DNA of 64,000 nt from Magallana gigas (Eukaryota). The notes under the pieces were generated by a model. That model saw nothing but the letters and a program-made list of their open reading frames with translations, searched no databases and was not told the DNA's origin. The position numbers were made by a program, and so were the translations under genes. The stretch is taken from contig NC_088860.1 of the NCBI RefSeq assembly GCF_963853765.1, forward strand, positions 2,170,001 through 2,234,000, written 5' to 3'. The stretch's first letter is position 1. Each line of letters begins with the position of its first letter. Positions 2,350 through 64,000 of this stretch are shown here, one piece after another.

Positions 2350-4790
2350 TTATCACCCAAGCACAAGTTTCGTTGGCAATGAGTTGTTGGCTGTAAGTAT
2401 TTTGATCTTACTCGTAGATTAACAAGTATGGCAAAAGCAAAAAAACAACGTCCTTCCCTATCAAATTTGAAGCGCATATTGCAGACCAAAAATATAATTC
2501 CTAACTTCTATTATTTCGGTCATCGAAGAGATCAGATTCTTCATACCAGGCTTAGACTTAAATGCAGAACTTTAAAACATCACCTTTTCTGTCGCAATAT
2601 AGAATATATATATAAAAAAAACTACTCTGCACATGCGGTAAACCCGAAACTAACAAACACTATATTCGTGAATGCCCCCATATACCAATGCAAGAATATT
2701 GCACTTGGATACTATACCATTTCATACCGACGTCAACATATTATTATATGGGGATACAAATTTTTCTTCAGCAAACAATGAAGCAATTTTCAAAGCAGTT
2801 TACAAATTTATTTCAGCATCAAAACATTTTCAAACATAGAAATTTATCACACATCCTACATCCTTTCTGTTATTTTACACACCCTGCATCTTATTTATTC
2901 CAATAACGCATTTTTTTCATATACGTTGTGAGTTTAGACGTAAATTTTTCATAATCGTGATTACAAAGACATTAAAACCTGGGCACTTCAATGATTTATA
3001 ATTTTGTAAATATTATCTAAGGAAACGGATTAATATAAGTGTTTACTTGTTTCCGAATCCTTGTTTAATTATGTATCATTGTATATATATGTTTTACGTT
3101 GTATTCATAATAAACTATGGTTTACACCAACAAATATGGCGTTTTACAAAAGTTTATCAAAGTAATTGTTGATTTACATCCCACTTTCATCATTTTTGAG
3201 CAAATGGTTTTTCAAACGGTAAGGTGTGTTTATACGAAGATACAATGACTTGAAATTTGAATGTTAAAAGTGGTATGGCACGAACACGGTATGGCACAAA
3301 CCACTGGGATAGCCAAGGTAAAGCAAGCGCTTCAACGGTCAAAGATTTGTATTCCGATGGAAACTGTTGATTGACTTCTATATTATGCATGTATTGTGTC
3401 GTTTTGTAGGAAAGGTAGAAATGAATGCTGTCTTAATAACTTCTTGGATAATTTTGCTAACAAATGCACAGATATAAGTCAAATATATTTAATCATATTT
3501 CATATAAATCTATCTAAAATTGAAAGGTGCAAGATAATAACAGACTATCACTCCATGTTTTTGTAAAAAAAAAAAAACTGTTGATAAGTGAATATATACT
3601 GTGGTTTCATCAATATTCGTTGAATACCAATTTTCGTTGATTTCGTTTGTAAGTTTACCCACGAAATTAAATGTTCATTGAAATGCAATTTCTATTAACA
3701 TTTTGTATTGATGGGGTCATTGACCACGAATTTACATATCCTTGAAACTGTGATTTTCTCTTTATCTACGAAAATTGACACCCTTGAATGTTAATGAAAC
3801 CAAATGTAAAGTCTTAAGAGCGATCGGCGGCAGTGTCATTACCTTCCTTAAGAATTTTAACTAAAACTGTTTAAAATGTAGCTGGGTTTTTTATAGTTTC
3901 TTGAGTAGTTTATTAGTAGCGCTAAATTTTGTTTTCTTTGTTTTTACCAATGTAATTCATTTCTTTTGTCGTGAAGAAGGGACTGGTTGTCCCGAAAATT
4001 TAACAAAATGTATTGTTCGTGTCGTTAGCCATTTTTAGTGCATTATATATTCAGTTTACCGGCTTAGTATCTATATATTAGATCTGACACTTTAATTAAA
4101 GATGCCTAGTGTAGTTGATTCTATCCAACACTTTGTAGTGAATTCTTTTTCACTAGCACACGTCCGTAGGTATAACTATATGTTACTACCTACAGCCTTG
4201 AACAGAGAAACAAACATCCTTCAGAACATCCTTGTAAATAGCAATCTTAAATTAATGGTTTTTCCATCGCGACGGTATTTTTATTCGAAGAGACAATGAC
4301 TTGAGATTAGAATATTAAATCGCAGAATGACATAAACCACTGAGCTAGTCTACATAGAGCGAACGCTTCAGCGGTAAAACATTTATATTTTGATGGAAAC
4401 TGTTAATTGACTTCTAATTATATTTGTTATAACATGTTATTTTGTAGAAGTAAAAGTGGGTGCTGTGTTAATTACCGCTGGAACAGTAAAACTAACACAT
4501 GCATAGGTATAACTGAAATACATTTAATCATCTTTCACTGAAATCAAAAACAATTTGAGAGGTTGAAAATACTATCAGAATAACAATACATGTTTTTGTT
4601 TTAAAAAAAAATCTCGGAGAAAACGTACAAAATGGTGAATTCTATTCAATCTCTTTTTTAGCGTGTAAGGACGGATGGTACAACGTAGATTGTCGTGACC
4701 AATGTCCGTATCCTTTCTATGGACATAACTGTGGATCCAAGCGTGATTGTAGTAATGAGACGTGTGACCATGTGACCGGCTGTTACAACG
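2350..4790 (+). CDS. MEGF10/CED-1-like receptor ectodomain cassette 0, partial (exons 2350-2392, 4448-4506, 4662-4790)
   Basis: AG/GT-bounded exons homologous to exons 4-6 of the other copies, in compatible phases 1-2, 2-1, 1-1. Peptides VITQAQVSLAMSCW, SKSGCCVNYRWNSKTNTCI, ACKDGWYNVDCRDQCPYPFYGHNCGSKRDCSNETCDHVTGCYN. One conserved Cys is Arg. Exons 1-3 would lie upstream of the window. Confidence 0.7.
3410..3471 (+). pseudogene. Orphan duplicate CC-loop exon with a dead splice donor
   Basis: Acceptor TTTTGTAG, open frame KGRNECCLNNFLDNFANKCT, 62 nt like exon 5. The donor reads ATATAAG instead of GTATAA. About 3190-3530 is a diverged paralogue of about 4270-4570. Confidence 0.65.
3597..3808. 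mobile_element. MITE-like element with imperfect TIRs
   Basis: TACTGTGGTTTCATCAATATT at the left; AATGTTAATGAAACCAAATGTA at the right. Confidence 0.5.
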
Positions 4791-5673
4791 GTAAATCATC
4801 TAAGACAACCATTGGCAGTCAAAGCGTAAAAATTATATTTTTTTATAGTTAAGAAAGAACACATTTTTGTCAAGGTTGGCATGTCCCACTCATGTACGAC
4901 CTTTTTGTATTATATCAGCTGTCAACAAATTGAAATAGTTCTACAGCCACAGAGTTCCTCACTTAACCATATGTTAGATTTGTTTCCTTGTCATTTACAC
5001 TTGTTCTGCTTTGCACAATATTTTTAAATCTCTATGCTAAACAAATTGCTTATTGAAAAAAGAAATTCTGGTCTGGCAAGTTCCATGCTTAACTGTCAAA
5101 AACGATCCGAGTGTATACATGTTTTACACGTGGTACTGTAGATGTAGGGACAGTATATTGGGAAGGAAGTTAAAAGTCAAAATCATTTAAGGCCACATGG
5201 GTTGTTTACATTCTGTCTTGCTTCTTCTGGTCTTCTGACCATGGGGCATAAAACTTGGTCTAAGTTTAAAGGTCTGCGGGACTGTATTCTTCTTAGGACA
5301 ATTGTAGTATGTTTCAAAATAATAAGTTATCGGTTTTACAAATAGCGTTTGCTTTCTCTATCAATATAAAAAAGAATCTTTTAATGTTTTGTAAAGTACA
5401 TGTAAATGTTTGTGTTATTAAGATAATACTTTGTGGCAAAAATATTGTGTCATCAAAGTATGATGAAATCGACATTTCAATTATTATAATAATAATTGAT
5501 TCAACGACATCTATATATCATGAAGCCTAAATATGTGTGTAAGTGATATCATCTTTTTTACGGCTTAGTACAATGAATCATCAACAAGTGAAAGGTTGAA
5601 TGAGGTTGTAAAGTATCGTTCGGATCCTTTCTTTGTCGTACAACTTTATACCTTGTTTTAATTGAGACCACAG

Positions 5674-63200: not shown

Positions 63201-64000
63201 TGTCACCAAGAGCCCGACTGTGGGACTCCAAGTGACTTCTACACTGACAACTCGGAGAACCCGTATGCACAAATCACAGACACCGCCAGACTCATGCCAA
63301 GAACTAAGCACACACCGAAGGAGGTGCCCATACCCCAGGCCCCGCTGTCTCGGAGTATGCCAGGCTCCAAGTGCGAGGAAACCATACCATACGATGTACT
63401 CAGTTTAAAAATCGGAAGCGTGAGTGATTTAAGTTCCTGTGATTGGTCGGCACCAACTGCGCATTGGAGCAAAACGTGCGCCCCGCCTCCTGTAGTTAAA
63501 AACAAACCTCTTCCACCATTGAAACGAAAAAGTTTTCTTTTTCCGGATGACTCTTCTGGATATCTGGAAGAGAAATACGTCACAGGTCCCAGCAGGTCCA
63601 GTGAAGCGGAAATAAAGAGCCTCCCTACCGCTCCCCCTCCGCCGACAAAAATCCACCAAAATGGAGAAATCGGGTCAACCAAACCTGCAAAGAAATTACC
63701 AACTCCGCCCAAACGAACAGTCACTCTAGTGAAGAAACCTGATAAGGTACCAAGAAACCCACCAATGCCACCCAAAAAACCACCCAAAAAATCCTTTGTA
63801 TACGCAGGCAGCAGTGACAATGGGGATCCCGCCATTCCTAATGGAAGCGCAAGTATGCAACATGAAAGTACAGCCGAAAAGAAATCAAAAACAGCTCACT
63901 TTATGCCCAACACTGTACTAAGGAGAGAAAAGTCCTTGAAGGCTAACTTACAGAAGGATGCCCTGAACAAACGGAAAACCAACGGCAAGTCGTACAACTT
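57278..64000 (+). CDS. Type I membrane receptor, MEGF10/CED-1/SCARF-like (exons 57278-57360, 58159-58226, 58606-58734, 59440-59482, 59888-59949, 60102-60254 or 60102-60221, 61542-61632, 61903-61940, 63124 to beyond 64000)
   Basis: GT-AG junctions in consistent phase. Signal peptide, two CC-loop plus EGF-like modules, TM segment IWIIVSISVGVMLIVVAIGVIC, juxtamembrane SKSGIDYQPKHIQ, and an 877-nt stop-free Pro/Lys-rich last exon. At least about 500 codons. Additional small exons cannot be excluded. Confidence 0.85.

What the first reader, a model, noticed from the sequence alone, without database searches (positions are those of the whole stretch)
2350..64000. Protocadherin-like layout: several variable ectodomain cassettes, one shared transmembrane/cytoplasmic region
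Seen: cassettes 1-3 each have their own ATG/signal-peptide exon and intact in-frame ectodomain exons. Cassettes 0, 1 and 2 end in a phase-1 GT donor (4791, 23054, 37070). The only TM exon in the window (61542) has a phase-1 acceptor, so any cassette could splice in frame to it. I found no TM exon in the 14-23 kb spacers. Established: clustered protocadherins, UGT1A and chelicerate shortened Dscam use this variable-5'-cassette, constant-3' design. Inference: this may be an analogous receptor-diversification system in a MEGF10/CED-1-like family, with ectodomain choice set by promoter choice.
Basis: partly seen in the sequence, partly recalled or inferred. Interest (0 to 1): 0.85.

Follow-up and report, generated by a model that had tools for sequence, protein, structure and literature searches.

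The report
Oyster receptor gene with repeated 5' halves
In a Pacific-oyster-type genome, the front half of a small EGF-module membrane receptor gene has recently been copied at least four times in a row ahead of one shared membrane-anchor and tail region; whether the extra copies act as alternative receptor heads or only make anchorless secreted proteins is not settled.

Summary
The window holds four tandem copies (c0 partial, c1-c3 complete) of a six-exon ectodomain cassette. Phases and splice sites are intact, and a spliced RNA contig validates the junctions. The TM, juxtamembrane and cytoplasmic exons occur once.

- **For it:** the genome's own annotated 582-aa protein (P0048) is cassette 1 joined to the TM exon, skipping cassettes 2 and 3. 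The acceptor is 61527, not 61542.
- **Against it:** the only real transcript I could find (L003) splices E1-E6 and then reads through the 23054/37070 donor. It ends 16 codons later and encodes a secreted 186-aa protein. A third model joins the same donor to transposon-derived exons in a spacer.

Orthologues in Crassostrea virginica, Ostrea edulis and Saccostrea echinata have one cassette. The array is therefore a young, lineage-specific partial tandem duplication, with copies 85-99% identical including spacers.

Upstream cassettes are still kept as coding units: nonsynonymous changes are fewer than neutral expectation, and there is no Cys loss or stop codon.

Membership of MEGF10/CED-1 is not supported.

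Most likely this is one receptor gene (c3 plus the constant exons) preceded by truncated paralogues that make soluble ectodomains. Splicing of an upstream cassette to the TM exon is an unproven extra output.

The parts
2350..2392 (+). Cassette 0, linker exon (E4 type, 43 nt, phase 1 to 2). E1-E3 of this cassette lie upstream of the window.
   Evidence: AG/GT sites and the 43-nt length are conserved with c1-c3. The same variant peptide occurs in XP_019925080.1 (P0064).
3410..3471 (+). Older degenerate CC-type exon copy in c0. The donor is AT instead of GT, and no EGF exon follows it.
   Evidence: 71% identical to 4254-4614.
4448..4506 (+). Cassette 0 E5 (CC exon, 3-nt shorter than in c1).
4662..4790 (+). 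Cassette 0 E6 (EGF module 2). It has a phase-1 donor (GT at 4791), and Cys5 is replaced by Arg.
20085..23053 (+). Cassette 1, six exons: 20085-20167, 21055-21122, 21496-21621, 22309-22351, 22717-22778, 22925-23053. This is the cassette used in the annotated 582-aa protein.
   Evidence: 100% match to P0048; junctions confirmed by the spliced contig L003
23054..23603 (+). Read-through of the E6 donor seen in RNA. It adds 15 more full codons, then the stop at 23098-23100, then at least 500 nt of 3' UTR. ATTAAA signals are at 24039 and 24104.
   Evidence: L003 positions 405-1087 are colinear with 22922-23603 at 98.8%.
33509..37069 (+). Cassette 2, six exons: 33509-33591, 34413-34480, 34853-34978, 36325-36367, 36733-36794, 36941-37069. 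E5, intron 5 and E6 are identical to c1.
37070..37620 (+). Read-through 3' end of cassette 2, with the stop at 37114-37116. This is the best match to the 3' part of the RNA contig.
   Evidence: L003 positions 405-1087 match 36938-37620 at 99.1%.
57278..60254 (+). Cassette 3, the one next to the TM exon: 57278-57360, 58159-58226, 58606-58734, 59440-59482, 59888-59949, and E6 from 60102. The E6 donor is either at 60222, which splits and loses the last Cys codon, or at 60255, which keeps it.
   Evidence: both candidate donors are conserved in a related species (L015-L017)
60862..60949 (.). 3' breakpoint of the duplicated unit inside intron 6. Beyond here nothing is repeated upstream.
61527..61632 (+). 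Single transmembrane exon (106 nt, phase 1 to 2).
61903..61940 (+). Single juxtamembrane mini-exon (38 nt, phase 2 to 1).
   Evidence: the same exon is present in C. virginica, O. edulis and S. echinata
63124..64000 (+). Last exon, the cytoplasmic tail. It is Pro-rich, carries the conserved ENPYAQI and YD(V/I)LSL motifs, and runs off the window.
14882..17151 (+). QRICH1/DUF3504-like transposon-derived ORF remnants in the c0-c1 spacer. A second copy lies at 50686-53613 in the c2-c3 spacer. An Ensembl/UniProt model joins a cassette E6 to exons of this kind.

Best explanation
This is a young partial tandem duplication, specific to the Magallana/C. gigas lineage, of the 5' part of an oyster-specific single-pass receptor gene.

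The ancestral gene is still seen in three other oyster genera. It has a signal-peptide exon, two modules each made of a linker exon, a CC exon and an 8-Cys EGF exon, one TM exon, one mini-exon, and a long tail exon.

In this lineage, a unit holding the upstream region, E1-E6 and about 0.65 kb of intron 6 was amplified to at least four copies. The TM and tail exons stayed single.

Shown:
- The copies are real paralogues.
- c1-c3 are intact and kept as coding sequence by selection.
- A cassette of the c1/c2 type is transcribed and correctly spliced.
- In that RNA, E6 is the terminal exon. Its weak donor (ACA|GTAATT) is not used, so the mRNA encodes a 186-aa secreted protein without an anchor.

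Inferred:
- The proximal cassette c3 plus the constant exons is the membrane receptor.
- The upstream cassettes work mainly as separate transcription units that make soluble ectodomains, possibly decoys or opsonin-like partners of the receptor.
- Long-range splicing of an upstream cassette to the TM exon, as in the annotated model, may occur as an alternative to read-through and polyadenylation. It remains unproven.
For: Repeat structure and breakpoint.

Exon anatomy and phases.

Single-cassette orthologues: C. virginica L001 (7.9-kb gene), O. edulis L002 and S. echinata L014, with no extra cassette within 10 kb either side.

Spliced RNA contig L003 / P0062 reads through the donor.

Selection: pN/pS is 0.22-0.37. 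In a neutral simulation using the intron substitution spectrum, nonsynonymous codons were 22 against 33 expected for c1-c3 (P=0.0002) and 10 against 16.4 for c1-c2 (P=0.003). There was no Cys loss or stop (P<=0.0014 for pairs with c3; 0.017 for c1-c2).

The c3-type E6 end is ancestral, being shared with a related species.

No E6-TM junction appears in any database protein other than the model P0048.
Against: P0048, the annotated protein of this very genome, is c1 plus TM plus tail, not c3.

c0-c2 share a 9-nt insertion that places a usable phase-1 donor just after the last Cys codon. c3 lacks that donor.

No stand-alone 186-aa NCBI model for c1 or c2 sits in the P0062 cluster.

The secreted form rests on one contig from one sequencing run, and its first 21 nt are not in the window.

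No transcript of c3 joined to TM was found either.
Confidence: 0.5

Rival explanations
1. The locus is a true variable-5'-cassette, constant-3' receptor gene. Transcription starts at one of several cassette promoters, and the cassette's E6 donor is spliced over any downstream cassettes to the single TM exon. Membrane receptors with alternative ectodomains result. The secreted form would be a by-product or a second regulated output, as with secreted versus membrane immunoglobulin.
For: All phases fit.

The annotated protein P0048 is exactly c1 joined to the TM exon, with a 38.5-kb intron over two intact cassettes.

c0-c2 share a derived donor placed after the last Cys.

Upstream cassettes are under purifying selection.

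At least 470 nt upstream of each ATG is 85-95% conserved between cassettes.

P0048 is 'not on record' as the longest product of a gene, as was also seen for a known isoform X2. This would fit a gene with several isoforms, but it could equally be masking.
Against: P0048 is a prediction. c1 is the cassette closest to the C. virginica protein in E2, E3 and E6, so homology could have chosen it.

The only RNA evidence shows the donor unused.

Downstream cassettes have good internal acceptors. E2 (phase 2) would shift the frame and E4 (phase 1) would not. A read-through pre-mRNA would therefore be expected to pick those up rather than skip ten exons.

There are only 3-4 cassettes, and c1 and c2 have identical E5-E6.

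No complementary sequence links the E6-downstream regions to the intron before the TM exon.
Confidence: 0.3
2. The upstream cassettes are by-products of unequal crossing-over with no function of their own. Their transcripts are noise: read-through, splicing into transposon-derived spacer exons, or frame-shifting or in-frame inclusion of exons from the next cassette. Only c3 plus the constant exons matters.
For: c0 is visibly decaying, with a dead donor at 3472 and Cys5 changed to Arg.

An Ensembl/UniProt model (P0063) joins a cassette E6 to QRICH1/DUF3504-like exons that lie in the spacers here.

Overall exon identity is not higher than intron identity.

The array is absent from other oyster genera.
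Against: c1 and c2 keep all 24 Cys, all splice sites and open frames. They show fewer nonsynonymous changes than the neutral simulation (P=0.003; P=0.017 for no Cys loss or stop).

L003 is a cleanly spliced mRNA with a complete ORF.
Confidence: 0.15
3. The tandem copies are an assembly artefact, with allelic haplotypes laid end to end.
For: Oyster genomes are highly heterozygous, and some segments are 97-99% identical between units.
Against: There are four copies, not two.

Divergence between copies reaches 4-15% and varies in a mosaic way. Units differ by a 5-kb segment, a 90-bp tandem array and a private LTR insertion.

Further distinct cassette variants exist in other assemblies and individuals (P0062, P0063, P0064).

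The window has no N gaps.
Confidence: 0.03

Closest known systems
Clustered protocadherins / UGT1A (variable first exons, shared constant exons, promoter choice)
   Same: A tandem array of 5' units, each with its own start codon and signal peptide. Each ends in a donor whose phase matches the first constant exon. There is one set of TM or tail exons. (Layout shown here; the comparison itself rests on established knowledge.)
   Different: Each unit here has six exons with internal acceptors rather than a single exon. There are only 3-4 units of very recent origin and low divergence. Use of the units with the constant exons is not shown by RNA. The only RNA contig ends inside the unit.
Chelicerate shortened Dscam (sDscam) with tandemly arrayed multi-exon 5' cassettes (PMC4835542, PMC9258826)
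   Same: Multi-exon 5' cassettes encoding extracellular domains lie upstream of shared exons that encode the TM and cytoplasmic parts.
   Different: sDscam has roughly 50-100 isoforms supported by transcripts, Ig domains and homophilic specificity. Here the modules are EGF-type, there are 3-4 cassettes, and no transcript proves the junction.
Partial (5') tandem gene duplication producing truncated soluble paralogues, and membrane versus secreted isoforms by competition between a weak donor and a downstream poly(A) site (as in the immunoglobulin heavy chain; established knowledge)
   Same: The duplication breakpoint lies in an intron, so upstream copies lack the TM exon. The RNA reads through a weak donor to a nearby stop and encodes a secreted ectodomain.
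   Different: The poly(A) site was not mapped, because the contig ends without a tail. Regulation between the two outcomes is not shown.
MEGF10/MEGF11/CED-1/Draper and SCARF (SREC) receptors
   Same: 8-Cys EGF-like modules of the type found in Tie2, SCARF1 and MEGF (profile hits at E 5e-7 to 7e-3). Single-pass topology. A tail with YxxL/I motifs and Pro-rich stretches. NCBI names the orthologues 'MEGF11' or 'SREC2-like'.
   Different: No EMI domain, and no Pfam EGF family passes threshold. There are two modules instead of about 15 or more. There is no NPxY. The tail has relatives only in oysters: 7 hits among 1.84 billion representatives.

Membership tests
Variable-5'-cassette / constant-3' loci (Pcdh, UGT1A, sDscam type) | Tandem array of 5' units, each with its own start codon and leader | tested here: met
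   c1-c3 each have an ATG plus signal-peptide exon. The E1 of c0 lies outside the window.
Variable-5'-cassette / constant-3' loci (Pcdh, UGT1A, sDscam type) | One shared set of constant exons downstream, with splice phase compatible with every unit | tested here: met
   The TM, mini and tail exons are unique. The donors of c0-c2 are phase 1, as are both candidate donors of c3 (60222 would lose the last Cys). The acceptor at 61527 is phase 1.
Variable-5'-cassette / constant-3' loci (Pcdh, UGT1A, sDscam type) | Mature mRNAs join each unit directly to the constant exons | tested here: inconclusive
   Only the predicted protein P0048 (c1 joined to TM) shows this. RNA contig L003 leaves the donor unused. 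No other junction-bearing sequence was found.
Variable-5'-cassette / constant-3' loci (Pcdh, UGT1A, sDscam type) | Each unit has its own promoter, and choice of unit is made by choice of promoter | not testable with these tools
   The upstream 0.5-1.2 kb is duplicated with each cassette. There are no start-site data. The 21-nt 5' end of L003 is not in the window.
MEGF10 / CED-1 / Draper | N-terminal EMI domain | tested here: not met
   Pfam scan of P0048 and the orthologues gave no EMI hit.
MEGF10 / CED-1 / Draper | Long run of atypical EGF-like repeats (about 15 or more) | tested here: not met
   Two EGF modules per protein.
MEGF10 / CED-1 / Draper | Cytoplasmic NPxY and YxxL motifs | tested here: not met
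   No NPxY in any orthologue. NPYAQI and YD(V/I)L are present and conserved.
SCARF / SREC scavenger receptors | Several EGF-like repeats of the SCARF type plus a long Ser/Pro-rich tail | tested here: inconclusive
   Weak profile match to the SCARF1 EGF domain (8hn0, E 0.007). The tail is Pro-rich. The repeat number is lower, and the tail shows no homology outside oysters.

The most novel reading that the evidence does not exclude
This is a variable-ectodomain, constant-tail receptor locus caught at birth in a mollusc. Each recently duplicated cassette has its own promoter. Each can either end at an intronic poly(A) site, giving a soluble ectodomain, or splice over the downstream cassettes to the single TM exon, giving a membrane receptor. 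The 9-nt insertion shared by c0-c2 would have created the donor that makes the second route possible.
Probability: 0.3. Interest if true: 0.7.

Novelty: new member of a known kind. Interest (0 to 1): 0.45.

Why it matters
If upstream cassettes really reach the TM exon, this would be an example of the protocadherin / UGT1A / sDscam gene design outside vertebrates and arthropods. It would involve EGF-type modules in a likely haemocyte-type receptor. It would also be young enough (single-cassette orthologues in sister genera, copies 85-99% identical) to show how such loci begin.

If they do not, the locus is still a clear case of partial duplication turning a receptor's ectodomain into secreted paralogues that selection keeps. 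This bears on how bivalves expand recognition molecules.

Either way, the three conflicting public models for one donor site show that the annotation at this locus should not be trusted without long-read RNA.

Tried and rejected
1. Searches for transcripts carrying the E6-TM junction. Three homology searches found only the secreted-form contig P0062 and an unspliced genomic ORF, P0065. Cluster listing is capped, so other members of the 306-member tail cluster could not be read.

2. Logan contigs holding the tail ORF (L004-L013, L018-L022) and P0065 (L015-L017) are all colinear with genomic DNA. They say nothing about splicing.

3. Looking up P0048 to get its locus annotation returned 'not on record'.

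4. The conserved upstream neighbour gene of C. virginica and O. edulis (109 aa) is not in the spacers, so it is not part of the repeat unit.

5. An AlphaFold model of the ectodomain had mean pLDDT 52.8, too poor for a fold search, so none was run.

6. Long-range RNA pairing between the E6-downstream regions and the intron before the TM exon. There were no minus-strand BLAST hits.

7. Literature searches found no description of this locus.

8. A naive reading of pN/pS as simple conservation was tempered. Exon identity is not above intron identity, so a simulation-based test was used instead.
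Full report
**What the window is.** The window is AT-rich animal DNA (GC about 33%) with no N. Proteins that match it are from oysters. The cytoplasmic-tail ORF has only seven relatives among 1.84 billion representative proteins, all from Ostreidae. Near-identical cassette proteins are labelled Magallana (Crassostrea) gigas (P0063 = A0A8W8IZI5_MAGGI, P0064 = XP_019925080.1). 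The window is therefore M. gigas or a very close relative.

**Checking the observation.** Self-comparison shows tandem units of 14-18 kb that include the spacers. Identity ranges from 85% to 99% and changes from segment to segment, so the copies form a mosaic. Each complete unit carries six exons:

| Exon | Content | Length (c1) | Phase |
|---|---|---|---|
| E1 | ATG plus signal peptide | 83 nt | 0 to 2 |
| E2 | 'CC' exon | 68 nt | 2 to 1 |
| E3 | 8-Cys EGF-like exon | 126 nt | 1 to 1 |
| E4 | linker | 43 nt | 1 to 2 |
| E5 | second CC exon | 62 nt | 2 to 1 |
| E6 | second EGF-like exon | 129 nt | 1 to 1 |

- c1 (20085-23053), c2 (33509-37069) and c3 (57278 to about 60254) all have canonical AG/GT sites, open frames and all 24 cysteines.
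- The TM exon, a 38-nt juxtamembrane exon (61903-61940) and the tail exon (from 63124) occur once.
- The duplicated unit ends about 0.65 kb downstream of E6, at about 60862-60949 in the c3 copy, roughly 0.6 kb before the TM exon.

Three corrections apply:

- In the annotated protein the TM exon starts at 61527, not 61542. Both are phase 1.
- c0 is partly decayed. A CC-type exon copy at 3410-3471 has AT in place of the GT donor, and its E6 has lost Cys5.
- c3 lacks the donor of c0-c2, because c0-c2 share a 9-nt insertion there.

**Relatives.** The orthologues in C. virginica (567 aa, 7.9-kb gene), O. edulis (587 aa) and S. echinata (568 aa) have the same exon plan with one cassette. None has an extra cassette within 10 kb on either side.

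O. edulis isoform X2 simply skips E4-E6, which shows that the phase-1 modules are interchangeable.

A related species, represented by genomic contigs at 87-90% identity, shares the c3-type end of E6. The c3 state is therefore ancestral, and the donor of c0-c2 is derived.

The array is a recent, lineage-specific partial tandem duplication of the 5' part of one gene.

**Are the extra cassettes alive?** Nei-Gojobori pN/pS between cassettes is 0.22-0.37. Overall exon identity is no higher than intron identity, so I also ran a neutral simulation. It placed the observed number of substitutions on the coding sequence using the intron substitution spectrum.

| Pair | Nonsynonymous codons observed | Expected | P | No Cys loss (pairs with c3) / no Cys loss or stop (c1-c2), P |
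|---|---|---|---|---|
| c1-c3 | 22 | 33 | 0.0002 | 0.0014 |
| c2-c3 | 26 | 35 | 0.0026 | 0.0008 |
| c1-c2 (both upstream) | 10 | 16.4 | 0.003 | 0.017 |

The upstream cassettes have therefore been kept as coding sequence. c0 is the exception.

**What the cassettes are joined to.** Three public sequences give three different answers for the same E6 donor.

- **P0048**, the 582-aa protein annotated on this genome (names masked), is c1 E1-E6 (100% identical, with c1-specific residues) joined at 23053^61527 to the TM, mini and tail exons. It skips c2 and c3. It is a computed model, though. c1 is also the cassette most like the C. virginica protein in E2, E3 and E6, so protein homology alone could have selected it.
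- **L003** is a 1087-nt contig assembled from one sequencing run. It is spliced at exactly the five junctions I had inferred, so it derives from RNA. It then runs colinear with the genome for 683 nt across the donor (99.1% to 36938-37620). The ORF stops 16 codons after the donor position and gives a 186-aa secreted protein with no anchor (P0062).
- **P0063**, an Ensembl/UniProt model of a further cassette variant, joins the same 'CYN' donor to QRICH1/DUF3504-like exons. Remnants of these lie in two spacers here, at 14882-17151 and 50686-53613.

I found no other sequence with an E6-TM junction. All the other Logan contigs are genomic.

**Mechanistic reading.**

- The E6 donor of c1 and c2 (ACA|GTAATT) lacks both the -1 G and the +5 G, so it is weak. 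The other cassette donors are GTAAGT, GTGAGT or GTAAGG, apart from E5, which is GTATAA.
- A transcript that began in c1 and ran on would meet ten internal exons with good acceptors in c2 and c3. The nearest is E2, which is phase 2 and would shift the frame. Clean skipping to the TM exon is not the default expectation.
- I found no complementary sequences that might bring the distant sites together.
- ATTAAA/AATAAA signals lie about 1 kb downstream of E6 in c0-c2.

I conclude that the demonstrated output of an upstream cassette is a stand-alone mRNA for a soluble ectodomain. c3 plus the constant exons is the likely membrane receptor, probably through the donor at 60255, which keeps the invariant last Cys. 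Splicing from an upstream cassette to the TM exon is possible but unproven.

The shared 9-nt insertion puts a phase-1 donor just after the last Cys in c0-c2.

**Family.**

- The EGF modules match the Tie2/SCARF1/MEGF type of 8-Cys EGF-like repeat.
- No Pfam EMI or EGF family passes its threshold.
- There are two modules, not about 15 or more.
- The tail has no NPxY. It carries conserved NPYAQI and YD(V/I)LSL motifs and PxxP runs, and it is confined to oysters.
- The structure model was too poor to use.

It works like a small scavenger- or phagocytic-type receptor, but it is not a demonstrated member of MEGF10/CED-1.

**Verdict.** The design resembles protocadherin, UGT1A and sDscam loci (PMC4835542) in layout. 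The defining step, in which each cassette is joined to the constant exons by promoter choice, rests on one gene model and is contradicted by the one RNA contig available. The array is small, young and only slightly diverged. Interest is moderate. Long-read cDNA would settle the question.

Noticed in passing
window 42313-47381 (minus strand): An LTR retrotransposon sits in the c2-c3 spacer only. Its 641-bp LTRs are 99.2% identical. It carries gag with a zinc knuckle (45563-46567) and protease-RT (43716-45566); no integrase ORF was seen. The homologous sites in the other two spacers (about 10935 and 27994) are empty, so the insertion is younger than the duplications.
   Followed up: partly
window 1154-2179 (+), flanked by 46-bp direct repeats at 40-85 and 2261-2306: An intact 341-aa Gag-like (PNMA family, E 8.5e-14) ORF lies in intron 3 of cassette 0. 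It is only 20% identical to the gag of the LTR element at 45563-46567.
   Followed up: partly
window 14882-17151 and 50686-53613 (+): QRICH1/DUF3504-like ORF remnants containing stops lie in two of the three spacers. The c1-c2 spacer lacks this roughly 5-kb segment. A UniProt M. gigas model (A0A8W8IZI5) fuses a cassette to exons of this kind.
   Followed up: partly
L003 positions 1-21: The first 21 nt of the spliced RNA contig, immediately before the ATG, match nothing in the window even with 3 mismatches allowed. The genomic sequence before the ATG has no AG acceptor. Possible causes are an unseen 5' UTR exon, a different cassette copy or allele, or an assembly end effect.
   Followed up: partly
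window 30888-31411; single units at 14734-14886 and 50538-50690: A 90-bp tandem repeat (5.8 copies, 94% matches) is expanded only in the c1-c2 spacer. The other spacers hold about 1.7 units.
   Followed up: no
cassette exons versus introns, c1/c2 versus c3: Exons are not more similar than introns (c1-c3: 90.8% against 93.5%). Synonymous divergence (about 0.2) is about three times intron divergence, even though nonsynonymous changes are depleted. Methylated-CpG decay in exons, alignment bias in introns or patchy gene conversion could explain this, but none was tested.
   Followed up: partly
window 35254-35885 versus 55861-56521 (both orientations) and 19394-19618: A repeat of about 630 bp matches in both direct and inverted orientation. 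It looks like a foldback or MITE-like element and lies inside intron 3 of c2 and upstream of c1 and c3.
   Followed up: no
L002 (O. edulis), proteins P0036 and P0037: Annotated isoform X2 of the O. edulis orthologue skips E4-E6 (module 2) and joins E3 directly to the TM exon. Module-level alternative splicing is therefore already annotated in this gene family.
   Followed up: partly
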